Positions 8,642-37,800 of a stretch of 64,000 nucleotides of DNA are shown piece after piece. Position 1 is the stretch's first letter; every line of letters starts with the position of its first letter. Made by a program: the position numbers and the translations under genes. The notes under the pieces are model-generated. The model was not told where the DNA came from and did not search any database. It saw nothing but the letters and a program-made list of their open reading frames with translations. Location of the stretch: sequence record MT811961.1, one strand, 5' to 3'.

Positions 8642-9778
8642 ATGACTGCGTCATTTAACCTTAACGACTACCTCCCATTCCTTGTTGACTTTTGCGGCAA
8701 CTTTGCTCATCCTAACGACCTATTTGAACTGGGTAAACTAACTGACCCTAATTTCAAAATGGATGAGTATCGCCACCCAGCCGTCAAAATCCTTCGCTCG
8801 GCGTTCTCCTATGAAAACATGGCCAAGGACATTTTCAATGACTTGGTCAGTCATCACGAGAATGGTGAAGAAAACTTTGTAACCAATGTAGACATGGAAG
8901 GCTATCTGACCGCTTCTATCTCACATGATGATTTATGGCAATCGCGTGAGTTGGCAGTAGCGGCTGCCCGCATGTGTTACAAGAAGGGTGACAAGTACGC
9001 ACTGATCGATTGTGTTCCACCAAACGCAGAGAAAGACAAGTTGTTATTAGATAACCTAGACTTCTTCTGTGTCAGTAACTTTGAGTCCGTTGGGCACTTC
9101 AGTGATCCTGATTATGGAAGCCTTCGTGTCACCGGTGGCTCTACTGTAGCAGAAACCCTGGAGCTAATCAAAGATCCAATGCCACTTATCGAAGGTAAAA
9201 CGAAGCTGGCTAATATGCCTCGTTTCTTTATTGATGCTATCATTGGCAAAGAGCGCTATCGCTCGGCTTTGGAAGGCATCAAAGAGATCGATGGTGTCCT
9301 GCATCTTTCAATGTTCCCGCTGTTAGCCTATACTGGCTACTTTAAAGAACAGCGTCGAGTACTACCGATGCCTAAATGCAAGCCATGTACTCTCAAGGAA
9401 GAAGGTTTTCCTAAGAATGCATTGATCAGTGCTTTCTACCATTACCCGATCGTTGAAAATCAACGTTACTTAATCAACCCAGATAACGTATATGCGGCTA
9501 TCGAATCTGACGCAGATTACTTTATCATCATTCTCCCTGCGGCGCTAACTGGCAAAGCCATGGCGTTTGCTAAAGAGATCCACGAGGCAACTGGCAAGAC
9601 AGTGGTATTACAGCACGAACGTTCAGAGTATCGCCCTACACAAGTAAACTACTTTTGGTCCATGGACCATGGTTTCCTTGCCAACAAGGTGAATGCTCGA
9701 TGCAAGAGTCTTACCAGTATCTCCTCGGATCTTTTTAAGGGAGCAAACAATTTTAACGAATCACTAGAGAATTTCTAA
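8642..9778 (+). CDS. Hypothetical protein, paralog of 10862..11971
   Basis: LINPDNVYAAIESDADYFIII versus LINPKNIWEILESDKPDIVIM; similar length. Confidence 0.75.
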   Translation: MTASFNLNDYLPFLVDFCGNFAHPNDLFELGKLTDPNFKMDEYRHPAVKILRSAFSYENMAKDIFNDLVSHHENGEENFVTNVDMEGYLTASISHDDLWQSRELAVAAARMCYKKGDKYALIDCVPPNAEKDKLLLDNLDFFCVSNFESVGHFSDPDYGSLRVTGGSTVAETLELIKDPMPLIEGKTKLANMPRFFIDAIIGKERYRSALEGIKEIDGVLHLSMFPLLAYTGYFKEQRRVLPMPKCKPCTLKEEGFPKNALISAFYHYPIVENQRYLINPDNVYAAIESDADYFIIILPAALTGKAMAFAKEIHEATGKTVVLQHERSEYRPTQVNYFWSMDHGFLANKVNARCKSLTSISSDLFKGANNFNESLENF

Positions 9779-24525: not shown

Positions 24526-25458
24526 ATGACTGTTAAAACATTTTCAAAAGAAGTAAACGAATTCCTAGCTGCAACTAAAGTAGAAACAGGCCTACTGGAT
24601 CTTCTATTTGGTACACGTAGATTCGACAGCTTTATGTCTTCTAGCCTACTAACTACACTTGACGTTTACGGTGTGTTTAAAGAAATGTCTCTGCTTGACT
24701 TCTTCAACATTAAGCGCGAGTGTGGCGACGAAGTTGTTCGCATGGGCGACACTATCACTGACGTTACAATCACGGATTCAGAGAACTACTCGTTCATCAG
24801 TGGTAACATGACCGTTACGGTTAACCCAGAATGGATCATTGTCGATACTATGCACGGCATGCACAAAGGTCTACTTTACAAACAGTACATCAACAAAGAA
24901 ACTGGTGAAGTAGTTAAACAAGAAACTCCGATGTCTTCTGGTATTGCGGTAACTAAATGGGAGTACATCCAGACTAGCTTACCTGGCTTCCCATTGACTA
25001 GTGCTGTAGAACAGACACGCGTCGATGGTGACGAAACAGAACGTAACATTATTGCTTCTCTAGTCGAGACTCGTGACGGCTATGAAGTTTACCGCGATGG
25101 AAACAAGAACATCAGCATCAAAGAAGAAGAGTACGGCTTTGTAGTAGTCGATGGTGATTCTACTAGCACTTACCGTAAAGATGGTCAGATTCTAACCGAC
25201 GTCGGTCTACAGAAATGGGCTGCTGCTCCTAGTCATCACGACTTGCCTGTTGTTACTCTTGTTAACTCCGAGTACACAGACGACAACCTAATCGATAACT
25301 TCACAATCTCTGAAGTATCTCGCACAACCGGTAAGTACGCTGACAAACGTCACACGTCTTACACTTATGAGCGTTCTGGTGATACAATCGCTAGTGTTGT
25401 TTTACGTGCTACCGAAGACGGTGAAACCAAAGTAACTCAATACACTTTCCCAGTGTAA
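24526..25458 (+). CDS. Hypothetical beta-rich protein (YD/RHS-like hairpins)
   Basis: Start moved to ATG 24526 after GGAGT; ends HTSYTYERSGDTIASVV...TQYTF. Confidence 0.75.
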   Translation: MTVKTFSKEVNEFLAATKVETGLLDLLFGTRRFDSFMSSSLLTTLDVYGVFKEMSLLDFFNIKRECGDEVVRMGDTITDVTITDSENYSFISGNMTVTVNPEWIIVDTMHGMHKGLLYKQYINKETGEVVKQETPMSSGIAVTKWEYIQTSLPGFPLTSAVEQTRVDGDETERNIIASLVETRDGYEVYRDGNKNISIKEEEYGFVVVDGDSTSTYRKDGQILTDVGLQKWAAAPSHHDLPVVTLVNSEYTDDNLIDNFTISEVSRTTGKYADKRHTSYTYERSGDTIASVVLRATEDGETKVTQYTFPV

Positions 25459-25470
25459 AGATAATAGAAC

Positions 25471-25517
25471 CCTACCTGCCTTCGGGCAGGTAGGTATTCT
25501 TTCTTATTTTTTTTTTT
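25471..25517. terminator. Terminator between convergent genes (probably bidirectional)
   Basis: CCTACCTGCC-TTCG-GGCAGGTAGG with a long T tract on +; the minus-strand operon ends at 25518. Confidence 0.85.
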
Positions 25518-26162
25518 CTAAAATTCTTCGTGTAACACCGTACCATCATGAATGGCATAGTCGGCATAAAACTGCTCAAAGAACCGGTCATTGATATCCT
25601 TGACAATTTCAATTTCGCCAGTGTCTATCTTGTATGATTCCTCAGGCTTGAATGGTTTCTCAGCAAACTCCAGTGTGTCACCATAGAAGAATGTACCTTC
25701 ACCTAACTGTCGGTCACCACCGGAAAGATCAAAGTGTAGATAGTACGTTAGTGTACTTAAAGTATGCCCACCGATGATTTCTGTCCAGTCGTTTCGATTC
25801 CAGTTACCCGAACCAGCACGGTTACGGAAATAGGCACGTCCAGAAAAGTAAACGACGTCCTCATTCGCATATTCAGTTGTATTGTCGAATTGCGGAATCA
25901 GCGCAGTATAAACTTTAACTGGAGATGTACCCAAACCTTCACCGTCACGATATGTGGCCGTATCGCCATTAAGCACAAGTACCCCGTGATCTTCGTTATC
26001 CTCGATAGAGTCGACAAGAAACTCAATACCTTCGCGGTAGTTGTAAACGGCGTTTTCCACATAGCGATGATACATAAAGGAGTTCGTAATGTATAGGTTA
26101 GTCGGGGTGAAAACCACCCCGTTGTAACCCACAACACGAACAATGAATAACTCGTGATGCAT
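25518..26162 (-). CDS. Putative virion appendage accessory protein with a CBM5/12-like segment
   Basis: FDNTTEYANEDVVYFSGRAYF...WNRNDW; TAAGGAG SD; last gene of the minus-strand island. Confidence 0.6.
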   Translation of the reverse strand: MHHELFIVRVVGYNGVVFTPTNLYITNSFMYHRYVENAVYNYREGIEFLVDSIEDNEDHGVLVLNGDTATYRDGEGLGTSPVKVYTALIPQFDNTTEYANEDVVYFSGRAYFRNRAGSGNWNRNDWTEIIGGHTLSTLTYYLHFDLSGGDRQLGEGTFFYGDTLEFAEKPFKPEESYKIDTGEIEIVKDINDRFFEQFYADYAIHDGTVLHEEF

Positions 26163-26171
26163 TTCTACTCC

Positions 26172-26657
26172 TTAAAGTGTATAGCTGTATTCTTGAACAA
26201 AGTCAGCTTCAACAAACAAAGAACCTTGCTCGATGTCGTTTACTGTGCGCAGAACACGCATGTTGCTACCTTCGATCTTGGCTAGGTAAACACCCTTTGG
26301 ATATTGGAAACCGGGTGTATGTAAACCAGCAAAAGGCTTACCATCAATATCCGGAACATAGAACACAAGCCAGGCATTCATATTAGCAAAACCATATCCT
26401 GGATTTACAGGAATGTCCTGAATTGCACGAAAGTACCCTTTGGGTGTTCGGATTTCGTCACCAAACGAATAACTGATATTATTGTTAAACGCCGTATAAG
26501 TATTGACGTCCGGATTGATTGGTGGTTCAGAGTTACGATCAATCAATGCACCTGTTAAATCGATGATGGTGTTGACCACCAGTGCCAAGTCTTTACCTGT
26601 ACTGTTTAACGGGTTTTCTGGAGCATCGGTCGATACGATGTATTGGATATCACTCAT
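26172..26657 (-). CDS. Short paralog of 36682..37677 (putative virion appendage protein)
   Basis: IQYIV...PENPLNSTGKDLA..VNTIIDLTGALID versus IRYLV...PDDPDNSTGRMIADSVNGLIDLVGALED; shared YxxGxEIRT. Confidence 0.75.
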   Translation of the reverse strand: MSDIQYIVSTDAPENPLNSTGKDLALVVNTIIDLTGALIDRNSEPPINPDVNTYTAFNNNISYSFGDEIRTPKGYFRAIQDIPVNPGYGFANMNAWLVFYVPDIDGKPFAGLHTPGFQYPKGVYLAKIEGSNMRVLRTVNDIEQGSLFVEADFVQEYSYTL

Positions 26658-28534
26658 GATGATTTAATCTCCACGACATGCTGTGAAACAAAGCGACGTT
26701 TCTTCCTAAGCGGAATCGTACGTACAAGGACCGTCACAGAAGCTTTGTGTAGCGATACAGCCGTCTTAGGCTTCATCAATACAGTAACGGACTGTTTGTG
26801 TACTCGGTTAACCAGAGACGGACGCAGTACAGCATAAGCAGACTGCTTAAGTACGTTAGGGCCAGTCTTAGGCTTCAGTACCGCATAACCAGATTGCTTA
26901 AGAATATTTGGACCTGACTTAGGTTTCAATACCGCATAAGCTGTCTGTTTCAATACCTTCAGTTCTTCAGCCTTCACCAATACTGCTTCTGAAACCATAT
27001 GCTTGATTGCCGGACCTGGGTCAGGTTTCAAGACTGCTTCCGAAACAATATGTTTTACAGCTGGGCCTGGATCTGGTTTTAGTACGGCTTCCGATACAAG
27101 ATGGTTAACGTATGGACCAGCAGGTTTAGCTTCCAGTACAACCGAGATCGTTTGCTTCTGAAGTTTTAGTTCGGGTGGCAAAGGTTCCAATACTACGGAA
27201 ACGGTTTGCTTCTGGAGTTTCAGATTGGCTGGTTTAGGTTGAACAACAACCGAGACAGCTTGCTTCTGAAGTGTGACTTCGGGTGGTGGTGGCTTGATAA
27301 CAACCGATACTGCTTGCTTCTGCAATGTTGCTTTTGCCAAGACAGGTGTAAGTATCGCCTCGCGCATCAAGTGATGAACATGAGGACCAGCATCAGGTGC
27401 CAGTATTGTTTCACGCATCAAGTGATGTACGTGTGGACCATTCGTCTGTACTACCTCTGTAACACTTAGACCTTCGAAATTGATTTCGTATTGTGTATCA
27501 ACTGTAACGATCTTGTCATCATGGACAATGTGTTCGTCAGTACCTAAGTGGAAGCCACCTTGGTAATTGATCACAGAAGGATCTGGGTCGTTGGTCCATT
27601 CATGAGCAGTGCCATCGCCATAGCGAATGCGGTTTTCTGTTTGCGTCCAATTGCTACCAGCATTAGTAATACCAGCTACAGTAAGGTCGTCAGACGGTAC
27701 AGTACCACGGAAAGCATAGTGTAGCGCTGTCACAGTACCAAAACCGGACACACCATCCCAGGATGAACCACTCCAGGTCTTCTCGGTATATGGGGCCACA
27801 GCTCGACGATAACGTAAGTTACTGAAAGCGTCATACTGGATGTACAAAGCACGTTGACTGTTGTCGTTTCTGTCTGTCCAAGCAGAGCCATCATAAACAC
27901 GAATCGAACCATCTGCTTTAGTAATGGCAATTTCAGTATCGCCTGTACCAGCAATACAGTCTACAGTAGAAACATCTTCGCCATTGGTTACGTCGGTCCA
28001 AACATCATCACGTGTAACACGATAGATCTTATTGCCAGCAGAATCAACCACAAGGGCACTGTCTGACGTTGCATCAATACCAAGTGCACTAATGGCACTG
28101 ATGCCAGGATCATTGGCCATCTGTACCCAGGCGTTTTGTTCATAAACATAAAGACTGGTATTAGCCGACATCCAGATGTTACGTGAGCCAGCAGTTGCAT
28201 GCTCAATGCCAGTGGTTGGCACTGCAATACTAGAATCAACCCAGACGTTTGTACCGCCTGTTTGATTGGCCACCAAACCAACTACTTCCCCTGTTGTACC
28301 TGCCACAGTTATTGTTTTCGTAACTGTTGACGTGGTACTAGTCAGGCCAGTAAACTCAAGTGTGTCGTAAGTAAGACCAAAATCAAGGTTCTTAACTTCC
28401 ACGTTAATTGACGTGGCACCCGTGGTAGTGGCACCTAAAGTAATCTCTAAGTCTACTGGTCCGTCTTTTTGAAAGACATGCAGTATGGCAATTGTACCTG
28501 AATCACCAAGAATTTCTGGTGTTGTTGTACTCAT
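26654..28534 (-). CDS. Putative scaffold protein: N-terminal beta-sandwich/propeller plus a C-terminal array of 16-18-aa repeats
   Basis: Trp-spaced propeller-like blades in the middle; about 15 tandem repeats from residue 366 to the end; AAGGAG SD. Confidence 0.7.
   Translation of the reverse strand: MSTTTPEILGDSGTIAILHVFQKDGPVDLEITLGATTTGATSINVEVKNLDFGLTYDTLEFTGLTSTTSTVTKTITVAGTTGEVVGLVANQTGGTNVWVDSSIAVPTTGIEHATAGSRNIWMSANTSLYVYEQNAWVQMANDPGISAISALGIDATSDSALVVDSAGNKIYRVTRDDVWTDVTNGEDVSTVDCIAGTGDTEIAITKADGSIRVYDGSAWTDRNDNSQRALYIQYDAFSNLRYRRAVAPYTEKTWSGSSWDGVSGFGTVTALHYAFRGTVPSDDLTVAGITNAGSNWTQTENRIRYGDGTAHEWTNDPDPSVINYQGGFHLGTDEHIVHDDKIVTVDTQYEINFEGLSVTEVVQTNGPHVHHLMRETILAPDAGPHVHHLMREAILTPVLAKATLQKQAVSVVIKPPPPEVTLQKQAVSVVVQPKPANLKLQKQTVSVVLEPLPPELKLQKQTISVVLEAKPAGPYVNHLVSEAVLKPDPGPAVKHIVSEAVLKPDPGPAIKHMVSEAVLVKAEELKVLKQTAYAVLKPKSGPNILKQSGYAVLKPKTGPNVLKQSAYAVLRPSLVNRVHKQSVTVLMKPKTAVSLHKASVTVLVRTIPLRKKRRFVSQHVVEIKSS
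26660..27439 (-). repeat. Tandem coding repeats (about 51-54 nt, 16-18 aa)
   Basis: GPHVHHLMRExILxP x2; LQKQxVSVVxxP x4; GPxVxHxVSEAVL x3; LKQxxYAVLxP x3; HK(Q/A)SVTVL x2; terminal FVSQHVVEI. Confidence 0.9.
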
Positions 28535-28544
28535 GCGTTACTCC

Positions 28545-29822
28545 TTATAGTGCAACAAATGTCATTGCCATGTTGATGCCGGCGGAAATAACCATATTGT
28601 AGTTGGTATCATCCGTAGCGGCCACATAGCCGTTTCCATCCCATGTTACTTTGCCTTTGAACTCTTTAGATAAGTCGTCCAACCAAAGCCATAGGTAAAG
28701 ATCATCGGCCGTTCCGTATTTGACAGTATCGTCGCCTTTATTGAAAACTCGTACGGTACGTGCACCTGAGTCAACCTTGATACTCATCGTGGTGCCACCC
28801 GTCCAGTCTGCGCCGCCTGAGTCAAGACCATAACCTCCGCTTACTGCCGCAGAAGAGAAAGCTTGATAGTGTACATTCTCGACTGAAAGAGTAGAGGCAT
28901 TGATCACCGCAGGTGTCCAGACGGAACCATCGGTCGGGTTTACATCAGAAACAAACGTTGTTGGATTGTCTTCTGAGTCAGCAGTAACCGCAATAAAGCC
29001 AACGAAGTGGCGATTGCCATTCTCTTCCAAGATCTGTGCAAGATAAGGCGAATCAGTAGCACCAGACGTATCACTGATTGTAGAAAAGTTAACAGCCGCA
29101 ATATTCATATCGGTAGGTACAGCGGTAAAGTCAAACTTCGCAGTTGAGCCGACACCTGTGGAACTTACACCACCTTGGTCTGGAGCCAAAGTTTGCAGCT
29201 CAGCAATATCACCAGCAAAACCATTCAGAACCATAGAAGCAGGTGCTTCTGATTGGATACGCCAACCACGAGTGTCTGTTGTTGAAATAACACCCTCGGT
29301 GAGGTTCAGGTTAGTCGGAATTGCAAATGTGCAACTCAATAGGTTACAGTCAGCAGGCCATGCGAAATCGCCAGATGCGATCTGTGTACCATCTGCGAAA
29401 AGACGCCAACCATCAGTCTTCTTAAACTCGATATCGATGTCGATCCATTTATTAAGATCGAATGGAGTAAAGGTAACTGTTGAGCCAGAGCCACCACCAA
29501 TACTTGCGCCGTAACAAGAGCCACGCTGTAAGTTAATGGACATGCGCTTAGTCTTTGTTTCATCCCAGTAGAAGATACGCAGACCAGCGTCGCCAGTCCA
29601 CTTGAGACGAGTGTGTTGCCACATACCTTCGTCAGTAGAACAGTGAGCTTGTTGGAAGTACACACGGGCATCACTAGCACTTGACCAGTCGTTTAATGCC
29701 CAGTTAGTCATCGTATCCTCTGCGGATACATCTACCACTTTTTGACGAACCGAATCTGGTCCGAACGAATCGCCAGCAGGAATCGTGATTGAACCCGGAC
29801 TAATTGTTGCTAGAATAGTCAT
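28545..29822 (-). CDS. Paralog 6 of the tandem lectin/ConA-like putative receptor-binding family
   Basis: LTEGVISTTDTRGWRIQSEAPA and VNPTDGSVWTPAVINA core motifs. Confidence 0.7.
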   Translation of the reverse strand: MTILATISPGSITIPAGDSFGPDSVRQKVVDVSAEDTMTNWALNDWSSASDARVYFQQAHCSTDEGMWQHTRLKWTGDAGLRIFYWDETKTKRMSINLQRGSCYGASIGGGSGSTVTFTPFDLNKWIDIDIEFKKTDGWRLFADGTQIASGDFAWPADCNLLSCTFAIPTNLNLTEGVISTTDTRGWRIQSEAPASMVLNGFAGDIAELQTLAPDQGGVSSTGVGSTAKFDFTAVPTDMNIAAVNFSTISDTSGATDSPYLAQILEENGNRHFVGFIAVTADSEDNPTTFVSDVNPTDGSVWTPAVINASTLSVENVHYQAFSSAAVSGGYGLDSGGADWTGGTTMSIKVDSGARTVRVFNKGDDTVKYGTADDLYLWLWLDDLSKEFKGKVTWDGNGYVAATDDTNYNMVISAGINMAMTFVAL

Positions 29823-29834
29823 TTGTTTTCCCCA

Positions 29835-29872
29835 AAAAGGAGAGGGAGGATTACTCCCTCAGTTAAACTTAA
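29835..29872 (-). repeat. Intergenic repeat copy 1 (37/38 nt identical to 31183..31220) with hairpin
   Basis: Plus strand AAAAGGAGAGGGAGGATTACTCCCTCAGTTAAACTTAA; GAGGGAG/CTCCCTC stem. Confidence 0.9.
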
Positions 29873-31170
29873 AGTGGCAGGATGTACATTTTCATCTGCA
29901 TACCGGAAGCAGATATTACATCAAAGTCATCACTGCTCAGTCCAGACTTGTAGCCACCCGTAGTATCATCCCATGTTAGGACGCGGTTAACGGTAGGTTG
30001 TCCTGCTACATCTCGGCGAGTGTAATAAACATGAATCTTGTCCGATGTGCCCCACTTACGATTGGTGTCGGCATCACAGAAGATCCACAGGTTACGTGCA
30101 CTATAAGCATGCTGTAGTTCAATAGCACCACCGCCATCCCATTCGCCGCCTTTGACAAATTGAGCCGCACCACCAGTACCATAGACACCACTTGTAATCT
30201 GCGCAGTGTTGAAGTAGTGTTCAACTGGGTTGATTACTGTGATCTCTCGTTCTGATAAATCAGCAGTCGACCAGTTGGAACCATCCGATGGTTTGGTCTC
30301 ATGCACAAACGAGTTAGGGACATTTTCACCATCACTGTCTGTACTATGCAAACCTAGCAGGTTGCCGTCTAAGATATAAGCAAGCATTGGTGATTCTGGA
30401 GTACCATTTGTTTCGGCGATGGTATTGATTGTATGACCAGCTACTTTGTAACCACCAGGGACAACAGGCATCTTGGCCACAAACTCTGCACCGGCACCGC
30501 CAGAACTCAAACCATCTTCGGTCAGACCAGGCGTTTGAATGTTGACTACATCGCCACTAAACGTACTAGAAACAAGCGAGGCTGGTACTTCTGAAGCGAC
30601 ACGCCAGTTTCGAGTATCTTCGTTGGCGACAACCATTTCTGTTATCTCGCCACCTTGGATTCGGAATTGGAAAGCACTGGAGTCAGTACCCAGTATGTAA
30701 CTTCCAGAGTAATCATGCTCCAAGCTACCGTTGATGTAAACCTTGCCAGAACCCATTTCTAAATCAAAATCAAACCAGTCAGAACCCTCGGCAGGGAATG
30801 TACCACTAAAGCTCTGGTTATTCTGCTGTGTCTGGTTTCGCGTATGCATCATAAACCATGGGGTAACCTGTAGCCCCCAGTAGTCTTTATAGGTAGAGGA
30901 ATAGCCGCTTGGCTGGCCATAAAACTCAACGCCTATCTCAAAAGAACTAACTGTGCGCTTGACGCGCGCATGGAACCACAACGTACTCGTTGGAGTGGAT
31001 TTCATTGATAAGCGACTATGTGCCTTAGAGTTACAATCTGGAAACTTCCAGTTTGTCATTGTGTCGTCGGCCGTAGCATCTACCGCAAGTGTACGAATGT
31101 CATTGGCTGAATAAGCTTGACCAGCAGTAACCGGCAGTGAAGCAGGGTTAACTGTTAAAAGAATTGACAT
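29869..31170 (-). CDS. Paralog 5 of the tandem family
   Basis: ITEMVVANEDTRNWRVASEVPA and ETKPSDGSNWSTADL. Confidence 0.7.
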   Translation of the reverse strand: MSILLTVNPASLPVTAGQAYSANDIRTLAVDATADDTMTNWKFPDCNSKAHSRLSMKSTPTSTLWFHARVKRTVSSFEIGVEFYGQPSGYSSTYKDYWGLQVTPWFMMHTRNQTQQNNQSFSGTFPAEGSDWFDFDLEMGSGKVYINGSLEHDYSGSYILGTDSSAFQFRIQGGEITEMVVANEDTRNWRVASEVPASLVSSTFSGDVVNIQTPGLTEDGLSSGGAGAEFVAKMPVVPGGYKVAGHTINTIAETNGTPESPMLAYILDGNLLGLHSTDSDGENVPNSFVHETKPSDGSNWSTADLSEREITVINPVEHYFNTAQITSGVYGTGGAAQFVKGGEWDGGGAIELQHAYSARNLWIFCDADTNRKWGTSDKIHVYYTRRDVAGQPTVNRVLTWDDTTGGYKSGLSSDDFDVISASGMQMKMYILPL

Positions 31171-31182
31171 TTTGTTTTCTCC

Positions 31183-31220
31183 AAAAGGAGAGGGAGGTTT
31201 ACTCCCTCAGTTAAACTTAA
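31183..31220 (-). repeat. Intergenic repeat copy 2 with hairpin
   Basis: Plus strand AAAAGGAGAGGGAGGTTTACTCCCTCAGTTAAACTTAA. Confidence 0.9.
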
Positions 31221-32539
31221 GCTGCTCGGACAAAAATCCAAAGACCAGTTGTAGCGTTAGCTGACATCATGGAACGAACCTTTGCTGCTTCTGGATCGCC
31301 ATTGGTCGTTTCCCAGTATTCGCGGTCACCGATAGTACCACCATTGCGCTTCGCTTTGAAAGAGAAGATCTCGTCTGTATCGGCACCCTTGATGAGCACC
31401 ACGATGTTGTCACCCCATGCACCGACGGTTTCTGTGGTGGCCTGAATCACTACTTTGTCGCTTTGTTCGTAAAAGTATTCGAACTGAGTATAGCCGGCAG
31501 CCGGTTTCTTGTCGTAGGCTTCTGAGAAGCCAGAAGCTTTCTTGATGCCATACAATGAACCACTTGCACCAAAGTCACGAATACGCATGTCCCACAAGAA
31601 AGACTCTGCACCAAACTCAAGAGCATCGATTTCCGCCATTGTCCAAGCATTGCCTGTCAGTGGGTTAACTTCCATAATGTCTAATTGCGGAGCTAGAGCA
31701 CCGTCGGCATCAGGGGCAGATGCATTTGGACCGTAGCCAACATCCGTGCCATTCGTAACCATGTGGCGGAATATAGGAGCAGCAGGATTACCAGCAGTGT
31801 TAACAACAGAGCCAAGTACCAATGAATGAACTTGTAGTCCAGCGGCGTTTGCATCTGTACTAAAGTCAGAGTATTGGAAAGACTGTTTCATTGGACCATC
31901 AGCGCTTACAGAGTCCGCAGTAAGGTCTTCAGTGTTAATGCTATCTACAATACCACCAAACTCATCGAAGCTACCGGCTGCTTCTGGATCTAGCTTGGCT
32001 AGTCGCCAACCACGAGTATCTTCGTCAGCAATGATTACTTCACTCACGTCTGGTTGGTGTGTCACCAGTGCAATGCTATTAAACGTTGCATTGACGATCG
32101 AGAAAGTAGTATCATGAATTTGGTTTCCGTCCACGTAGAATGCCACGCGGTTATTGTAGAAATGGACGTCTATGTCCGCAACTGCCGCAGTCTGTGCTGG
32201 TGCACTTGCCGTACCGCCGCCAGGCTGCTGGGTATTAAGGAAGAATTGATCTCCACCACCAGAACCGATACGCAGTTTGTACGTACCGTCATTGGCAACC
32301 AAACTAAACTGTGCCGTTGCATTGAGTGAAGCACCGTTATTGGCATAGCGGAAGTGGATCCAAATATCTTTAGGAACATTTTCAGCAAACTTAACTGTTT
32401 GACCTGATTCAAATTCTACTTTGTCAAAAGAACCAGGTAGGTTAGATGCCTCTAGGCGTGTACGTGGGTCACCAGAACCCAGGTAGTCAGCAGAAGCAAC
32501 GATAGGTGTAACATCACCTAGGATAGCTAAAACAGCCAT
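31217..32539 (-). CDS. Paralog 4 of the tandem family
   Basis: VSEVIIADEDTRGWRLAKLDPEA and EVNPLTGNAWTMAEIDALEFG. Confidence 0.7.
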   Translation of the reverse strand: MAVLAILGDVTPIVASADYLGSGDPRTRLEASNLPGSFDKVEFESGQTVKFAENVPKDIWIHFRYANNGASLNATAQFSLVANDGTYKLRIGSGGGDQFFLNTQQPGGGTASAPAQTAAVADIDVHFYNNRVAFYVDGNQIHDTTFSIVNATFNSIALVTHQPDVSEVIIADEDTRGWRLAKLDPEAAGSFDEFGGIVDSINTEDLTADSVSADGPMKQSFQYSDFSTDANAAGLQVHSLVLGSVVNTAGNPAAPIFRHMVTNGTDVGYGPNASAPDADGALAPQLDIMEVNPLTGNAWTMAEIDALEFGAESFLWDMRIRDFGASGSLYGIKKASGFSEAYDKKPAAGYTQFEYFYEQSDKVVIQATTETVGAWGDNIVVLIKGADTDEIFSFKAKRNGGTIGDREYWETTNGDPEAAKVRSMMSANATTGLWIFVRAA

Positions 32540-32551
32540 AAATTAAATCTC

Positions 32552-33949
32552 CTAATAACCTTCAATCATTACTTCAAGAACTTGGCCTGCGCGATCTTTC
32601 AGCCATGAGTAGAAATAGCCGCCGTCACGACGATAGTCCTTGGCTGTATTATTCCAAGGAATCTGTTCGGTCTGGATATTTCCATCTGTCTCGCGGAAAT
32701 GCAATCGAACGCCATTTGGACCATGAGCCCACTTGCGGCCATCGTTGGTTTTAAAAATACCACGACCGTAGTTGTTTTGCCATTCCACTGATTCAATGAA
32801 TCCACCCGGAATACCATTCTCGTCGTACCATGTACCGCCAGAAATAAGATTGTTCAAGGTAGTACTATCTTTGCGGTAACCTTGGTAGTTGTTATTGCTA
32901 TTGGCAGTAGTGAAGGTAATGTGTGGAATGAAGTCTACATCCGCAACTGTTCCAGCAAACTCTACGCCCGCTTCCAGTGTATTTACTTCGGCTACTGTCC
33001 ATGCCTTGCCTGTCTTAGGATTGACTTCATGGAAAGCACTCAGAGCACGACCAGGGGACGTAGCAGTGATCTGCTTAGGCGCGAGTTCTTTGTGAACCTC
33101 GCCATCCGTCTTGATTGTCATCTGGGCATATTCTAGTTCAGATGCAGCCGACTTGCTTACCAATGCTTTCACATCGATCGCGCGAATACTGAGGTCAGAA
33201 TTAGAGGCAAAGGTGTTGTGTACATCAGTAAGACTGAAAAGATTCGCACCAGCTACTTCTGTTTCCATAGCTGCTTCATCCAGGCCGATCTCAGTAATGT
33301 CTGAGATATCGCCGCTCATATTGCCCGATGCCAAAGCGTCCGGCGTCAGAGTCAATAGACGCATACCTAGTGTAGGCTCGTCTTCCGTGATGATCAGTTC
33401 ACTAATTGGAATCGTACTGCCGCCATCAATCCAGACATAGAGCATTTTATAACTAGACTTGGCACTGTTACTCGTACCTGTCTTAATTAGAGCACCGTTA
33501 CAATATACTTCGAAGTAGCCCGTATTCGAATCAACATGTAGGTCGATTTCGGTTTGTGCAGCTTTGTCGTATTTGCCTGTTTCGTAACAGTATTCGCCAG
33601 CTGCCTGACACTGAATACGGCCATCGCTATAACCAACCGTGATTACTGTATTCGTATTGGAGCTTGGTGACGATGGGTGTTCTCCGATCTGTAACTTCAC
33701 ATAACGCGAGGTATCATTGCGTTGATTGAAACGAAAATGCACCCAGTATTTCTTGGTGTCACCTGGAGGAGGACTGACTTGAAATGGACTGAAGTTATAG
33801 TTCGGTCTTGGGGTTGCACGACGGTTTGCTTCTGGATCAAATGCGTCCGTATTCGTATCAACTTGTACACGAACGTCACTGCTAGTAAAGTAATAGTTAG
33901 GATCCGTTACCGTACCAGACAGTTCATTCTGCATAAATAAAATTGCCAT
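32552..33949 (-). CDS. Paralog 3 of the tandem family
   Basis: ISELIITEDEPTLGMRLLTLTPDA and EVNPKTGKAWTVAEVNTLEAG. Confidence 0.7.
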   Translation of the reverse strand: MAILFMQNELSGTVTDPNYYFTSSDVRVQVDTNTDAFDPEANRRATPRPNYNFSPFQVSPPPGDTKKYWVHFRFNQRNDTSRYVKLQIGEHPSSPSSNTNTVITVGYSDGRIQCQAAGEYCYETGKYDKAAQTEIDLHVDSNTGYFEVYCNGALIKTGTSNSAKSSYKMLYVWIDGGSTIPISELIITEDEPTLGMRLLTLTPDALASGNMSGDISDITEIGLDEAAMETEVAGANLFSLTDVHNTFASNSDLSIRAIDVKALVSKSAASELEYAQMTIKTDGEVHKELAPKQITATSPGRALSAFHEVNPKTGKAWTVAEVNTLEAGVEFAGTVADVDFIPHITFTTANSNNNYQGYRKDSTTLNNLISGGTWYDENGIPGGFIESVEWQNNYGRGIFKTNDGRKWAHGPNGVRLHFRETDGNIQTEQIPWNNTAKDYRRDGGYFYSWLKDRAGQVLEVMIEGY

Positions 33950-33963
33950 TATGGGCTCCTGTG

Positions 33964-35322
33964 TTATTCTACGTAAACGCTTACTGCTTTACCGGCACGG
34001 GCATGGAACCAGTTAACCAAGGTAGCGTCAGTAACTCGATAGTCACCCGAGTACGGAAATACTTTCGTAGTCTCTGCGCCGTCTTCGTCAACAAAGCGGA
34101 AAGTAATAGAATCCTTACCGTCTACTTTGTTGCCGCCGCCAGTACCAAATGCCGCGACAACACGGCCGTCGCTCTTATCGCCATAAAGAAAATAAGGACG
34201 ATCATGACCAGTTCTGTCTGTACTCGTAATCGAAGCAACTAAATCGCCGGTAGGTACGCCGTAAGCATAGTAACCAGCAATATTTGTATCATCATAACGA
34301 ACATCAAAACGAAGGACGAATAGTGGCGGTGTTTCTAAATTCACGCCAAACTCAGCAGCTTTGATTTCTGCTTCTGTCCATGCTGCGCCCGTGTTAGGGT
34401 TTACTTCGTAGAGTTCATTTAAAGAACCTCGACCACTTACAGTGTCTAGTAAACGACCGACAACTGGGCTGTGTTCATCCGCATCCGTTTTCAAGACATT
34501 ACGCATATAGTTTTGTTCCATGCCAGCTTCAGCTGATGCGACACTAGACACAGCGACTGCTTTAATGTCGTATGTACTAAAGTCGATTGCAGCATCCGGA
34601 TCAGTATAAGCAAACGTGTGTTTACCTGCCCCCGTAGACGTCACGCCGTCTGGGTTAAGTGACAATTCACTAACCGTACTCACATCGCCAGTAAAGTCAG
34701 TATGTGTGCCGTTTGCTTCTGGAACAAGAGAGATAACGCGCATGCCAATGGTGATTTCACCTTCGGTAACGATTACTTCTGAAGCACTGCGTCCAGCAGA
34801 TACTTTACGAATCTGAACAGAATCCCAAAGACTTGGTTTGAAACTAGAAACAATTGCCGAAGTACCAGAGGCTTCATTAACGCCATTGACATAAAAAGCA
34901 AAAGCGCCAGTGTCTGTATTCAGCATTACGTCTACGTGGTGGTTTCCATCTGCGACTGCTTTAGCGCCGATCTCTGTGCCACTCAGGTTCTTAATGCGAA
35001 CCTCGCCTGAACCACCTTCAATACGAAAGCCCTCTGCATTCGGAACACCGTCATAGCCAAAGTTGATGAGGCCATTGGAGTACCCATTCTGAACGTAGAT
35101 CATGGCATGGATCCACAGAACCGTAGCGTCACTCGATGCACCCGTCATCTTCATGCTGGCATATGCAAAGTTTCGGCTCTCTACTTCTACGCGACCACGA
35201 GAAAACACCGGGTCAAAGCCATCGCCCGTAGCTACCAAGCCACGACGCGGGTCACGTGCTGTGGTTTCGTCGTTTACAGAAACTTCACCATTGGCTTCGT
35301 TTTGAATAAATAAGAAAGTCAT
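33964..35322 (-). CDS. Paralog 2 of the tandem family
   Basis: ASEVIVTEGEITIGMRVISLVPEA and EVNPNTGAAWTEAEIKAAEFG. Confidence 0.7.
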   Translation of the reverse strand: MTFLFIQNEANGEVSVNDETTARDPRRGLVATGDGFDPVFSRGRVEVESRNFAYASMKMTGASSDATVLWIHAMIYVQNGYSNGLINFGYDGVPNAEGFRIEGGSGEVRIKNLSGTEIGAKAVADGNHHVDVMLNTDTGAFAFYVNGVNEASGTSAIVSSFKPSLWDSVQIRKVSAGRSASEVIVTEGEITIGMRVISLVPEANGTHTDFTGDVSTVSELSLNPDGVTSTGAGKHTFAYTDPDAAIDFSTYDIKAVAVSSVASAEAGMEQNYMRNVLKTDADEHSPVVGRLLDTVSGRGSLNELYEVNPNTGAAWTEAEIKAAEFGVNLETPPLFVLRFDVRYDDTNIAGYYAYGVPTGDLVASITSTDRTGHDRPYFLYGDKSDGRVVAAFGTGGGNKVDGKDSITFRFVDEDGAETTKVFPYSGDYRVTDATLVNWFHARAGKAVSVYVE

Positions 35323-35332
35323 TTCTTACTCC

Positions 35333-36682
35333 TTAAAATGTTTCTACCCAAGCATTCAGTACTTGACCAACACTCGCATTGAACTTGGCTTCTAGTGTAT
35401 CGTTACGACTAGACTTAAAGCTGCCGCCAAAACCAGTATTGTAGGACATGGTGTTCGTAACAAAGTAGGTGCCGTCTTCAAACAACAGATGAATACGTGC
35501 GCTCGTACTGCCATGCCAACCGCCACTAGCGGTCTTTGGACTCAGTAACAGATAATTATTGTCTACGGAGTAATAGAAAGCATCGACGATTGATTCGTCC
35601 TTGCCGCCCAGTAGTGTACCGAACGTACTGCCTTCTGTACGCCAACCGCGTAGACTACCATCGCTTGCAATACGAATCTTCAAGTCAGGCTGACCAACTG
35701 CCACACCGGCTTCCAAAGCATTGATCTCAGACACAGTCCAAGCTGCTCCCGTTTCTGGGTTTGTTGTCATGACTGTATTGAGTGACTTCGAATCACTAGT
35801 AGTGTCAGACACAAGGAAGTCATATGGTGCATGTATATTGCCATTAACCCGCACTGCGTTTTGAACAAACTTGTCGACGAAAGTCTCATCCGCAGTAGAC
35901 ACAGTAGATACGGTCACTGCTGCAATGTTGTACTGACTCATATCGATACCTGCATCAATGTCAGTATAGTCAAACATAAAGTTACCAGCACCAATAGTAG
36001 TCATACCGTCGTTGCTGAGTGATACTTCGTTAACTGTCGCAACAGCACCTTCAAGGCTATTGTCTGATGCAGCTGCCTCTGGGGCAAGTGTAGCGACACG
36101 CATGCCGATCGTAGGCTTCGCTTCCGCAATGATCATTTCGGTAAACGAGGTACCAGCTGCACTACGTAGCCCAGACTTCATATAACAGTCTAGCCCCATG
36201 TCAACAATCCATGAGTGCGTACCACTGCCTTTAGATAGACCATCTTGAAATATTTCAAAGGCACCCGTGCCGAAGTTGATTTTAACGTCAAAATCCGATT
36301 GGTTGCTTACATTAGTCAGGTTCACTGAGGCGTCACGTCCAGCAAAGTCGACAATTCTCGCTCTGCTGTTTTCTATGCGCAATTCAAAATGTCGACCTGT
36401 ACCAGCTGGTGTCGTAAATGCCCATGCCGAAGAGCCAGAAGACAAAACAAGAGAGCGGAAATGAAACCAAATATCCGAAGAGGTATTTGCAGGTGGTTCG
36501 GTTACAAACCAACCTTTACCTAGGGCATGGTTGGAAGCCTGTGAGTGTCCACGACTAAACTTCTCATCGCGAAACTGAGGATAGATTGGATTCAACACCA
36601 CACGTTGGTCATAATCTGTACTACCTACTTCGGCTTCTGTTGTAAAACCATGAGACTCATTAAAGACGAAAAGAAAACTCAT
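35333..36682 (-). CDS. Paralog 1 of the tandem family
   Basis: FTEMIIAEAKPTIGMRVATLAPEA and TNPETGAAWTVSEINALEAG. Confidence 0.7.
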   Translation of the reverse strand: MSFLFVFNESHGFTTEAEVGSTDYDQRVVLNPIYPQFRDEKFSRGHSQASNHALGKGWFVTEPPANTSSDIWFHFRSLVLSSGSSAWAFTTPAGTGRHFELRIENSRARIVDFAGRDASVNLTNVSNQSDFDVKINFGTGAFEIFQDGLSKGSGTHSWIVDMGLDCYMKSGLRSAAGTSFTEMIIAEAKPTIGMRVATLAPEAAASDNSLEGAVATVNEVSLSNDGMTTIGAGNFMFDYTDIDAGIDMSQYNIAAVTVSTVSTADETFVDKFVQNAVRVNGNIHAPYDFLVSDTTSDSKSLNTVMTTNPETGAAWTVSEINALEAGVAVGQPDLKIRIASDGSLRGWRTEGSTFGTLLGGKDESIVDAFYYSVDNNYLLLSPKTASGGWHGSTSARIHLLFEDGTYFVTNTMSYNTGFGGSFKSSRNDTLEAKFNASVGQVLNAWVETF

Positions 36683-37677
36683 TACATCAAGCCCTCCAAA
36701 GTAATGGAAATGTTAGCCAGTGTTTTGTCGGCTACGCCGTTTTGTTTTAGTGTGATCGTATCACCTGTTGTTACTGAAACGTCACCGGTCGAAACGAATG
36801 TTCCTGTAGTGTCGCCAGTAGCAAAATTGATTGTGCCGATCTGGGTTGCACCATGCAGGACAACAAGAGAGGTATCTGCCTCGGCTGCTGTGGCCGCAAC
36901 TGCAACTGAGTTAGGGAAGTTTTGCTTAAAGACAAAGTCTTGTGTAATAACTTCGATAAAGATCTCTTCATCATCATCGGTGGTGTCTTGAATAAAACAC
37001 TTGATATTAAAGAGAGTTGTTGTGTTTACTTGGAAAACCGAATCCCACTGAGTCGGATCAAATGGACCTGCCGTTTCGATCTTGTCCTTCGATACATATA
37101 CACCGTCGTTGTATGTTACGAAAACACCAGCTTCATAGGTTGCAGTATCATCAAAAGTACCAGACCAGTCTTGCATACCACCACGGTCATACGTAGCGTC
37201 TACTTGCCACTGGGCAGGATCAAATGGTGTACCTGGATCGATGTCTTCCAGCGCACGCATAACAATCACATTGTCCGGCGTTAGACGTACTGTTGCTGTG
37301 TTGGCAAAGTATCCGTTTACTTCATCATAGATGCCGCCATAAGCAGCACCGCCGTCAGCAGGCATGTGGGTTAAAGCCCAAAAGTTACGGTTGGTCAAAC
37401 TAATGTTGCTGTTGGCAGGTACGTTGGAAATACAACGGAAATAACCAAAAGCAGTGCGGATCTCAGATCCTGCCAAGTATGGGTAATCAGAGTTATGTAC
37501 TTTGCTTACCACCACAGAAGGGTCTGGATCTGGCCAACTGGAATTATCTTCCAGTGCACCAACCAAGTCAATCAGACCATTCACCGAGTCTGCGATCATG
37601 CGGCCGGTTGAGTTATCTGGATCGTCTGGTTCTTTTTTAGCCACCAAGTAACGAATTGGAAATGATGTATTCCGCAT
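36682..37677 (-). CDS. Putative virion appendage protein with CBM5/12-like repeats
   Basis: Start moved to ATG 37677 (AGGAG SD); FDDTATYEAGVFVTYNDGVYVS...FDPTQW and a second FDPAQW; first gene of the minus-strand island. Confidence 0.65.
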   Translation of the reverse strand: MRNTSFPIRYLVAKKEPDDPDNSTGRMIADSVNGLIDLVGALEDNSSWPDPDPSVVVSKVHNSDYPYLAGSEIRTAFGYFRCISNVPANSNISLTNRNFWALTHMPADGGAAYGGIYDEVNGYFANTATVRLTPDNVIVMRALEDIDPGTPFDPAQWQVDATYDRGGMQDWSGTFDDTATYEAGVFVTYNDGVYVSKDKIETAGPFDPTQWDSVFQVNTTTLFNIKCFIQDTTDDDEEIFIEVITQDFVFKQNFPNSVAVAATAAEADTSLVVLHGATQIGTINFATGDTTGTFVSTGDVSVTTGDTITLKQNGVADKTLANISITLEGLM

Positions 37678-37754
37678 GGGAGTTACTCCTGTCAATTACG
37701 TAATTAAGCTGCACTCGCAGCATAAAATTTGTTGTGATCATTTAAAACATAATC

Positions 37755-37770
37755 CTATATTACTATAGTG
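37755..37770 (+). promoter_or_regulatory. phiKZ-type early promoter motif
   Basis: CTATATTACTATAGTG in the divergent intergenic region. Confidence 0.7.
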
Positions 37771-37800
37771 ACTGAAGCCACGAAAATAAAAGGATGCAAG

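What the first reader, a model, noticed from the sequence alone, without database searches (positions are those of the whole stretch)
28545..36682. Six paralogs with a conserved core and swapped C-terminal tips, in two subfamilies
Seen in sequence: similarity stops abruptly after the NPxTGxAWT...ExG-type motif, and the last 100-140 aa differ between copies (aromatic- and Gly-rich, typical of ligand-binding tips). Paralogs 1-3 begin M(S/T/A)(F/I)LF...NE..G and use GMR in the hinge. Paralogs 4-6 begin with M(A/S/T)(V/I)L and use (G/N)WR. Inference: a cassette of alternative receptor-binding specificities that diversifies by tip exchange at the conserved motif, without a reverse transcriptase.
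Basis: partly seen in the sequence, partly recalled or inferred. Interest (0 to 1): 0.68.

Follow-up and report, generated by a model that had tools for sequence, protein, structure and literature searches.

The report
Six lectin-like phage tail paralogs
A giant Vibrio phage carries six old, diverged copies of a lectin-like virion protein in a row, probably to bind several host sugars, but their end domains are one inherited domain family and were not swapped between copies.

Summary
The window is Vibrio jumbo phage vB_pir03. The six tandem minus-strand genes (425-465 aa) are real paralogs and do fall into two subfamilies (p1-p3, p4-p6).

The "swapped tips" reading fails its own test.
- The C-terminal ~115 aa of the two subfamilies align profile to profile (97.6%, E 4e-12).
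- They pair up as the cores do.
- AlphaFold models of p2 and p6 give the same order of strands and helix.
- No repeat at the motif is long enough for recombination, and the genome has no reverse transcriptase.

Most of 1,906 relatives are ~325 aa and end just after the NPxTGxxWT motif, so the drop in similarity marks a domain boundary. The tip is an add-on gained a few times.

In sister phages the changed part is as often the lectin domain as the tip. Against the nearest relative, one block is replaced: the second half of the upstream fibre gene plus nearly all of p1.

The operon also encodes a fibre-like protein and a protein ending in about 15 β-strand repeats. This resembles the rope-and-bead "chain-like fibres" of phages GP4 and A1002, but binding is untested. 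The scan has already noted this same stretch, only in this genome.

The parts
35333..36682 (-). p1, 449 aa, subfamily A. Three parts: lectin-like domain D1, conserved middle domain D2, C-terminal add-on D3 ('tip', residues 331-449).
   Evidence: ORF; alignment; core tree; phrog_6368 E 1.4e-12
33964..35322 (-). p2, 452 aa, subfamily A. The modelled copy: D1 residues 1-197, D2 198-330 (NPxTGxxWT at 308-316), D3 331-452.
32552..33949 (-). p3, 465 aa, subfamily A
   Evidence: (phrog_6368 E 3e-23)
31217..32539 (-). p4, 440 aa, subfamily B; a long branch about equally distant from all the others
   Evidence: (phrog_6368 E 1.7e-30)
29869..31170 (-). p5, 433 aa, subfamily B
   Evidence: 67% identical orthologue in contig L004
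28545..29822 (-). p6, 425 aa, subfamily B; second modelled copy
   Evidence: AlphaFold2 pLDDT 89.1, pTM 0.86, same order of secondary-structure elements as p2; 67% identical orthologue in L004
36682..37677 (-). g337, a fibre-like protein that opens the operon. Its N-terminal domain is shared with g161. Its ~115-aa C-terminal beta domain precedes the lectin-like genes in every phage type examined.
   Evidence: phrog_7049 'tail fiber protein' E 2.4e-8; C-domain alignment A4; weak PDB match to 'Putative tail fiber' 9rkv_M, E 0.003
26654..28534 (-). g626. Its C-terminal ~245 residues (window 26657-27394) are 14 short beta-strand-like repeats of 17-18 aa in contiguous classes, plus a basic terminal strand. 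Candidate 'rope'.
   Evidence: translation; the same kind of repeat protein follows the paralogs in sm033, VCPH, L004 and a Brevundimonas phage
26172..26657 (-). g161, a paralog of the N-terminal 170 aa of g337
   Evidence: BLASTP 34% identity, E 6e-28
25518..26162 (-). g214, last gene of the minus-strand block; a protein of similar size ends each sm033 module
   Evidence: homology judged by eye from the translations, not scored
35400..37200 (.). The only diverged patch against phage C-ZP2022. It covers g337 residues ~160-331 and p1 residues 1-~410, and reads as replacement by a homologous allele.
   Evidence: difference density; dS 0.57-0.84 inside against ~0.03 outside, dN/dS 0.02-0.07
31171..31216 (-). 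46-nt spacer between p4 and p5, with a 7-bp GC-rich hairpin followed by a T run; near-identical to the p5/p6 spacer
   Evidence: repeat D1
29823..29868 (-). 46-nt spacer between p5 and p6, with the same hairpin

Best explanation
The six genes are anciently duplicated, vertically diverged members of a large, uncharacterised family of phage virion proteins (phrog_6368).

Each protein has three parts:
- an N-terminal concanavalin-A-like lectin jelly roll (residues 1-~197);
- a conserved middle beta domain that ends in the NPxTGxxWT...ExG motif (~198-330). These first two parts form the ~325-aa core, which is the whole protein in most relatives;
- a ~115-aa C-terminal beta-sandwich add-on (the 'tip'). 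It is one homologous domain family, was gained a few times, and was inherited together with the core.

Inferred, not shown: the six proteins are alternative host-glycan-binding subunits of one accessory tail appendage. They would be made from one operon with a fibre-like protein (g337) and a protein whose tail is a string of beta-strand repeats (g626). They would be mounted on that string by beta-sheet augmentation, as the small fibre dimers of phages GP4 and A1002 are mounted on their 'rope'.

The array changes by duplication, loss or replacement of whole genes and by allelic replacement of large blocks. It does not change by exchange of tips at the motif.
For: - Paralogy, copy number and the two subfamilies.
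- Family size and architecture: 1,906 hits at E<=0.001. Of the 149 listed hits (the top 150 minus one duplicate), 106 are 320-360 aa, and the ~325-aa hits match profile positions 1-324/325 only.
- Tip presence needs only 4 changes on a 129-row core tree, against a shuffled mean of 23.9.
- Tips are homologous: hhalign of subfamily A against B gives 97.6%, E 3.6e-12 over 107 columns. The p2 and p6 models share the same order of elements.
- Virion or tail context: 'virion protein' in N4-like roseophages; 'Virion structural protein' in Achromobacter phage AchV4; next to Pb4 and other tail genes in T5-like VCPH; after the tip attachment protein in a Brevundimonas siphophage; g337 hits tail-fibre PHROGs.
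- Module with strand repeats: seen in pir03, sm033 (twice), L004, VCPH (three times), a Brevundimonas phage and Vibrio N4-like phages.
- Published precedent for rope plus beads joined by beta augmentation, with two bead types in contiguous blocks: PMC13730344 and PMC12609058.
- pir03 infects 31 of 51 strains of several Vibrio species (PMC7765460).
Against: - No binding, virion presence or sugar recognition has been shown for any of the six.
- The complex prediction could not be run.
- The beads of known chain-like fibres are 140-171 aa. They show no sequence similarity to these 425-465-aa proteins or to the repeat string.
- The fold of the middle domain and of the tip was not searched separately.
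- Repeat numbers do not scale simply with paralog numbers: 14+1 for six in pir03, 11+1 for three in sm033, 3+1 or 18+1 for one in VCPH.
- Two relatives with core-only proteins (roseophage RD-1410W1-01, RcXuper) show no repeat protein next door.
- The pairs p2/P0010 (core 46%, tip 23%) and p1/P0011 (core 38%, tip 67%) show that core and tip can evolve at very different rates. Rare domain-level exchange is therefore not excluded.
Confidence: 0.6

Rival explanations
1. One reading: a cassette system in which C-terminal tips are exchanged among the copies at the conserved NPxTGxxWT motif, producing new receptor specificities without a reverse transcriptase.
For: - The motif is the most conserved stretch and lies exactly at a domain boundary.
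- Two pairs of relatives show core and tip identities that disagree: p2/P0010 46% against 23%, and p1/P0011 38% against 67%.
- Some family members carry other C-terminal add-ons, for example P0101.
Against: - Tips of both subfamilies are one domain family and group as the cores do.
- Tip data do not reject the core groupings (p 0.06, 0.41, 0.24).
- The p1/P0011 jump in identity lies near residue 271, about 35 residues before the motif.
- At DNA level the motif offers only 67 nt at 70% identity, between one pair of copies.
- There are no inverted repeats.
- The replacement seen against C-ZP2022 spans the fibre gene's C-half plus nearly all of p1.
Confidence: 0.08
2. The six proteins are independent side fibres or baseplate decorations. 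Each would be attached on its own (for instance through its conserved N-terminal strand and middle domain), and the g626 repeat string would have another role.
For: - Core-only relatives in roseophage RD-1410W1-01 and RcXuper have no repeat protein beside them, yet the roseophage protein is annotated as a virion protein.
- Repeat counts do not scale with paralog counts.
Against: - A repeat protein follows the lectin-like genes in myo-, sipho- and podophage loci.
- In VCPH, two small repeat proteins each follow one paralog. Their repeat types recur in the large 336-aa repeat protein.
Confidence: 0.22
3. The proteins are not tail components at all. They could be capsid decoration lectins, or non-structural proteins acting on host envelope glycans (ConA-like glucanase or lyase activity).
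For: - The ConA-like fold is shared with GH16 glucanases and lyases.
- No proteomics exists for pir03.
- One neighbour in VCPH is annotated 'capsid decoration protein'.
Against: - The genes lie in tail-gene neighbourhoods in T5-like and lambda-like phages.
- The fibre-like operon partner matches tail-fibre families.
- No GH16 or lyase family passed a Pfam threshold.
Confidence: 0.1

Closest known systems
Chain-like ('rope and dimer') fibres of podophages GP4, VP1 and A1002, and the collar whiskers of myophage Bas63 (PMC13730344; PMC12609058; Zheng et al. 2023, J Mol Biol 435:168258, as cited in those papers)
   Same: - A protein with an extended string of tandem docking segments is encoded beside the genes for the subunits it carries.
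- In A1002 two different subunits occupy contiguous blocks of docking sites (dimers 1-7 and 8-11). In g626 the repeat classes are likewise contiguous.
- In the published structures, docking is by beta-sheet augmentation. The g626 repeats are strand-like, with alternating hydrophobic residues.
   Different: - The subunits here are 425-465 aa with three domains including a lectin jelly roll. The known ones are single 140-171-aa domains.
- There are six subunit types instead of one or two.
- The host phage is a jumbo myophage.
- There is no detectable sequence similarity.
- Dimer formation and docking are untested here.
phrog_6368 and the ~325-aa 'virion protein' of N4-like roseophages (for example RD-1410W1-01 gp06), with look-alikes in VpV262, Achromobacter AchV4 and Serratia JS26
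   Same: The two-domain core is the same, with the N-terminal MxIL strand, the SExIIAD..T.G.R hinge and the terminal NPxTGxxWT..ExG motif. HMM E values run from 3e-8 to 2e-30 for p1-p5. Foldseek TM normalised to the target is 0.6-0.75.
   Different: - The pir03 proteins carry an extra C-terminal ~115-aa domain.
- They occur as six diverged copies.
- p6 itself falls below the PHROG threshold and is tied in through p5 and the family profile.
Concanavalin-A-like lectin/glucanase superfamily: L-type lectins, calreticulin/calnexin, CBM66, the lectin-like subdomain of clostridial neurotoxin binding domains, and CBMs of phage baseplate proteins such as the J-1 Dit
   Different: - Sequence identity is 6-15%.
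- The Pfam Laminin_G_3 score (16 bits) is below the cut-off (27.6).
- No sugar- or metal-binding residues were examined.
- A shared fold does not show a shared ligand.
Multi-receptor-binding-protein phages with several different tailspikes or fibres on one adaptor (for example the branched fibres of T5-like DT57C, PMC4728585; other examples recalled from general knowledge)
   Same: Several different host-binding proteins are encoded side by side and probably displayed together, which fits a broad host range.
   Different: Those proteins are unrelated or only N-terminally related trimeric spikes or fibres. Here there are six full-length paralogs of one lectin-like family plus a strand-repeat protein.

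Membership tests
phrog_6368-type two-domain phage virion protein family | Significant match to the family profile over the ~325-aa core | tested here: met
   p1-p5 score E 1.4e-12, 1.2e-16, 3.2e-23, 1.7e-30 and 3.1e-8. p6 has no PHROG hit but is 29% identical to p5 over 331 aa (E 2e-40). It is recovered by the family profile.
phrog_6368-type two-domain phage virion protein family | The core ends at the NPxTGxxWT...ExG motif (the natural C-terminus of most members) | tested here: met
   Of the 149 listed hits, 106 are 320-360 aa, and the ~325-aa hits match profile positions up to 324/325. The motif is present in p1-p4 and degenerate in p5 and p6.
phrog_6368-type two-domain phage virion protein family | Presence in the virion | not testable with these tools
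   Only depositor annotations of relatives are available: 'virion protein' and 'Virion structural protein'. No proteomics exists for pir03.
Concanavalin-A-like lectin/glucanase fold (domain 1) | Jelly-roll fold superposable on solved members | tested here: met
Concanavalin-A-like lectin/glucanase fold (domain 1) | Sequence-family membership (Pfam Laminin_G_3 or a related family above the gathering score) | tested here: not met
   Best score 16.2 bits against a cut-off of 27.6, E 0.012, for p2 only. Nothing was found at E<=0.01.
Concanavalin-A-like lectin/glucanase fold (domain 1) | Carbohydrate binding | not testable with these tools
   Needs glycan arrays or host-cell binding with purified protein.
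Rope-type chain-like fibre (GP4 / VP1 / A1002 / Bas63 whiskers) | A rope protein with tandem docking segments, encoded beside the subunit gene(s) | tested here: met
   g626 carries 14 strand-like repeats plus a terminal strand, directly downstream of p6. The same arrangement occurs in six other loci. This shows an arrangement of sequences only, not docking.
Rope-type chain-like fibre (GP4 / VP1 / A1002 / Bas63 whiskers) | Subunit of the GP4 gp80 fold (about 140-170 aa) | tested here: inconclusive
   No sequence similarity to any PDB chain for the family profile, domain 2 or the tips. The subunits are three times larger. Domain 2 and the tip were not folded and searched on their own.
Rope-type chain-like fibre (GP4 / VP1 / A1002 / Bas63 whiskers) | Subunits dock on the rope by beta-sheet augmentation, as dimers | not testable with these tools
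Cassette or targeted diversification systems (DGR, invertible tail-fibre segments) | A reverse transcriptase with template repeat, or inverted crossover sites with an invertase | tested here: not met
   No RVT_1 match in the whole pir03 record. No inverted repeats of 16 nt or more in 25400-37800. All six genes are co-oriented.

The most novel reading that the evidence does not exclude
The operon builds a six-component rope-type fibre on a jumbo myophage. The g626 strand repeats, sorted in contiguous classes, would each recruit one particular paralog, so the appendage would present an ordered series of six different lectins.

Within each paralog lineage the C-terminal domain is conserved, while it differs strongly between paralogs. 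It could therefore be the 'address label' for its repeat class or neighbour, and the N-terminal lectin domain the part that adapts to hosts.
Probability: 0.35. Interest if true: 0.8.

Novelty: new variant of a known kind. Interest (0 to 1): 0.5.

Why it matters
If the inferred assembly holds, the rope-and-bead fibre principle would extend a long way. So far it has been solved only in a few phages, with one or two small subunits. Here it would apply to large lectin-like subunits, to six subunit types on one rope, and to a family found in myo-, sipho- and podophages (1,906 relatives).

That would give a concrete, testable account of how a jumbo phage used against Vibrio in aquaculture reaches many host strains.

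For annotation, the result names three domains in a protein family that is 'hypothetical' everywhere. It also shows that the drop in similarity marks a domain boundary, not a recombination site.

Tried and rejected
Searches that found nothing useful
- Pfam at E<=0.01 found nothing for the six paralogs or their neighbours.
- The word-index protein search returned only the query and one weak hit.
With p2 alone it found no relative in viral contigs.
- PDB sequence searches gave nothing significant with the tip profile, the repeat string or domain 2.
- The ESM Atlas gave only generic small beta-sandwiches for the tip, TM 0.52 or less.
- tblastn of the repeat string found only pir03, C-ZP2022, sm033 and VCPH.

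No verdict on binding exists.
- The window has no held genome, so the phage record was searched through its locus handle instead.

Ideas tested and dropped
- That the g337-type C-terminal domain is the counterpart of the GP4 gp80 bead: hhalign probability 0.4%.
- That the tip is required for the repeat protein. Core-only paralogs in Brevundimonas and Vibrio N4-like phages also have strand repeats next door.
- That p2/P0010 proves tip replacement. Tip data do not reject their sisterhood (p 0.41).
- That 24.5-25.5 kb differs from C-ZP2022. This was an 18-nt offset artefact: the proteins are 98% identical.

One literature search was wasted on generic 'virion protein' papers.


Full report
IDENTITY AND OBSERVATION

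The window is 100% identical over the finding to Vibrio phage vB_pir03 (MT811961.1, 286 kb, host Vibrio harveyi). It is 97.2% identical to phage C-ZP2022. All genes of the region are deposited as hypothetical proteins.

Six co-oriented minus-strand ORFs of 449, 452, 465, 440, 433 and 425 aa fill 28545-36682; I call them p1 to p6. They align over their whole length. Core-to-core BLASTP E values run from 1e-5 to 1e-43. A profile of the six finds exactly six copies in pir03, six in C-ZP2022 and six (3+3) in the 320-kb phage sm033.

In a maximum-likelihood tree of the cores of 26 tip-bearing relatives, p1-p3 and p4-p6 fall on the two sides of a branch with 98/95 support. The paralogy and the two subfamilies are therefore real.

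ARE THE TIPS SWAPPED?

No, for six reasons.

- Pairwise identity in the last 110-129 aa is lower than in the core (13-26% against 21-33%). But it groups the copies exactly as the core does: p1/p2/p3 together, p5/p6 together, p4 alone. BLASTP on tips alone is still significant within these groups (E 3e-4 to 2e-6).
- A sliding-window profile shows that the tip is no less conserved than the variable stretches of the core (mean identity 0.16-0.22 against 0.10-0.20). What looks like an abrupt stop is the fall from the motif peak (0.36-0.40).
A profile of 11 subfamily-A tips aligns with a profile of 15 subfamily-B tips at 97.6% probability, E 3.6e-12, over 107 of ~120 columns. The reversed control gives 0.6%.
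- AlphaFold2 models of p2 (pLDDT 89.4) and p6 (pLDDT 89.1) have the same order of elements. Both tips end with two long strands, a short strand, a helix and a terminal strand.
- The tip tree is poorly resolved. Its supported pairs, (p6,P0009), p5 with them, and (P0012,P0013), match the core tree. AU tests on tip data do not reject subfamily A (p 0.06), nor the core sister pair p2+P0010 (p 0.41), nor p1+p2+P0010 (p 0.24).
- At DNA level the motif region gives only one repeat, 67 nt at 70% identity between p2 and p3. There are no inverted repeats. The genome has no reverse transcriptase.

WHY SIMILARITY DROPS AT THE MOTIF

A profile search of 1.84 billion representative proteins found 1,906 relatives (E<=0.001). 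Of the 149 listed hits (the top 150 minus one duplicate), 106 are 320-360 aa. The ~325-aa hits match profile positions 1-324/325, so they end a few residues after the ExG of the motif. About 26 carry the ~115-aa extension.

On a 129-row core tree, presence of the extension needs only four changes, against a shuffled mean of 23.9. All tip-bearing proteins lie in one supported clade of 42 rows.

The motif is therefore the natural C-terminus of the ancestral protein. The tip is an add-on domain that was gained a few times and then inherited with the core. Some relatives carry other or larger C-terminal add-ons (P0101, P0032).

FOLD

In the p2 model, residues 1-~197 are a concanavalin-A-like lectin jelly roll. 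An exhaustive VIA-align search gives the following matches, all over model residues 1-~197:

Foldseek agrees. The global TM scores of 0.2-0.3 there show that only this one domain matches. Sequence searches give only weak echoes: Laminin_G_3 at E 0.012, below Pfam's cut-off, and GH16 and a legume lectin at E 0.013-0.028.

The GMR/GWR 'hinge' sits at the junction of domain 1 and domain 2. The NPxTGxxWT motif (p2 308-316), a short helix and a last strand close domain 2. The tip starts at about residue 335.

Domain 2 and the tip were barely tested by the fold searches.

Against predicted viral structures, the two-domain core recurs in many phages at TM (normalised to the target) of 0.6-0.75. These include Roseovarius phage 1, VpV262, Serratia JS26 (three copies) and Achromobacter AchV4, where it is named 'Virion structural protein'.

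SISTER PHAGES

Against C-ZP2022, the whole 16-kb comparison differs by 0.4-1.4% per gene except for one patch, window ~35400-37200. That patch covers g337 residues ~160-331 and p1 residues 1-~410. Inside it dS is 0.57-0.84, against ~0.03 outside, and dN/dS is 0.02-0.07. This reads as replacement by a diverged allele under purifying selection. Of the 34 amino-acid changes in p1, 32 lie in the core.

More distant relatives came from Logan contigs: L004 (five paralogs in the same operon frame) and L013 (sm033-like). Identities per domain (lectin domain / domain 2 / tip) are given below.

| Pair | Lectin domain | Domain 2 | Tip |
|---|---|---|---|
| p1 vs C-ZP2022 | 89 | 92 | 97 |
| p1 vs L013 | 31 | 47 | 67 |
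| p5 vs L004 | 55 | 77 | 76 |
| p6 vs L004 | 71 | 61 | 66 |
| p2 vs L004 | 52 | 38 | 23 |
| Mean of the paralog pairs within pir03 | 23 | 27 | 17 |

Between paralogs the tip is the most diverged part. Between orthologue-like pairs it is usually at least as conserved as the lectin domain. The jump in the p1/L013 pair lies near residue 271, before the motif.

The array itself varies by whole genes: six copies (A A A B B B) in pir03, five (A B A B B) in L004, and two sets of three (A B B) in sm033.

CONTEXT AND LIKELY MECHANISM

The six genes sit in a minus-strand block (25518-37677) among plus-strand genes. A bidirectional hairpin at 25471-25494 closes the block.

The block opens with g337. This protein hits tail-fibre PHROGs. 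The profile of its ~115-aa C-terminal domain weakly matches solved chains named 'Putative tail fiber' (9rkv_M, E 0.003) and 'Tail Spike protein, gp124' (8fqc_P1, E 0.09).

After p6 comes g626. Its last ~245 residues are 14 strand-like repeats of 17-18 aa in contiguous classes (2, 4, 3, 3, 2), plus a basic terminal strand. Then come g161, a paralog of the g337 N-terminal domain (E 6e-28), and g214.

The same module recurs in several phages: a protein ending in the g337-type domain, then one to six lectin-like genes, then a strand-repeat protein.

- sm033 has it twice: three genes each, with 11+1 repeats in three classes.
- T5-like VCPH has it three times, among tail genes. Each has one gene, with 3+1, ~18+1 and 3+1 repeats. 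The large repeat protein contains the repeat types of the two small ones.
- A Brevundimonas siphophage has it after the tip attachment protein.
- Vibrio N4-like phages have it in embedded form.

Repeat counts were read by eye from the translations. Earlier notes of this scan on the same genome (s1-158811, s1-158297) pointed me to this link. I checked the co-occurrence on these loci, but not their count of about 20 loci.

The literature gives a precedent. In podophages GP4, VP1 and A1002, fibre dimers of 140-171-aa subunits attach in tandem to a 'rope' by beta-sheet augmentation. In A1002, two different subunits occupy contiguous blocks of the 11 docking sites, which that paper reports as a first (PMC13730344). 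Myophage Bas63 has a shorter rope domain carrying two whisker dimers (PMC12609058).

By analogy I propose that p1-p6 are mounted on the g626 string and present several lectin domains to the host surface. This fits the broad host range reported for pir03: 31 of 51 strains from several Vibrio species (PMC7765460).

It remains inference. I found no sequence similarity to the known ropes or beads. The subunits here are three times larger.

VERDICT

The paralog array and the two subfamilies are real. 'Swapped tips' is not: the tips are one diverged domain family inherited with the cores.

Alternative binding proteins without a reverse transcriptase are plausible. Tip exchange at the motif is not supported.

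The array is best filed as a new variant of a known kind. It consists of multiple lectin-like host-binding subunits, probably of a rope-type fibre, from a large protein family that nobody has characterised.

Noticed in passing
window 29823-29868 and 31171-31216 (minus strand): The 46-nt spacers p5|p6 and p4|p5 are near-identical. Each holds a 7-bp GC-rich hairpin (GAGGGAG, 5-nt loop, CTCCCTC) followed by a T run, just upstream of the next start codon. Together with the first codons they form a 100-nt direct repeat at 79% identity. This could be an attenuator, a processing site or a translational element copied along with the gene.
   Followed up: partly
window 26172-26657 against 36682-37677: g161, near the end of the operon, is a paralog of the N-terminal 170 aa of the fibre-like g337 at its start (34% identity, E 6e-28). 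In sm033, each module likewise ends with a ~160-aa copy of the fibre's N-terminal domain.
   Followed up: partly
L007 (Vibrio phage VCPH) 7091-7309, 9214-10224, 11998-12198: There are three strand-repeat proteins in one T5-like tail region. Two small ones have 3 repeats plus a terminal strand, each after one lectin-like gene. One of 336 aa has about 18 repeats and contains the repeat types of both small ones plus a third type.
   Followed up: no
L015 (Ralstonia phage GP4) 7948-8925, beside gp80 at 8932-9354: The 325-aa protein encoded next to the solved 140-aa fibre subunit gp80 is Gly-rich. By eye it has a periodicity of roughly 17 aa, similar to the 17-18-aa period of the pir03 repeats. I could not confirm that it is the published rope protein.
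   Followed up: no
window 36685-37023 (g337 C-terminal domain); alignment A4: A ~115-aa domain (motif ..NG..GT..F..G....F..GD......G..D.T..I.ITL.G) ends the protein that precedes the lectin-like genes in myo-, sipho- and podophage loci. It weakly matches the C-terminal ~90 residues of two solved tail-fibre or spike chains (9rkv_M E 0.003; 8fqc_P1 E 0.09).
   Followed up: partly
P0101 (513 aa) and P0032 (502 aa, VCPH): Some family members carry a different or larger C-terminal add-on than the ~115-aa tip. The position after the motif therefore accepts other domains on a long evolutionary scale.
   Followed up: no
window 26654-27800 (g626 residues ~100-380): The N-terminal part of the repeat protein has its own recurring W-containing segments. 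It is absent from the sm033 repeat proteins, which are repeats only. Its fold and role were not examined.
   Followed up: no
window 25458-25518 against C-ZP2022: An 18-nt length difference in the intergenic stretch with the bidirectional terminator-like hairpin (25471-25494) shifts the two genomes. The flanking gene is 98% identical at protein level.
   Followed up: yes
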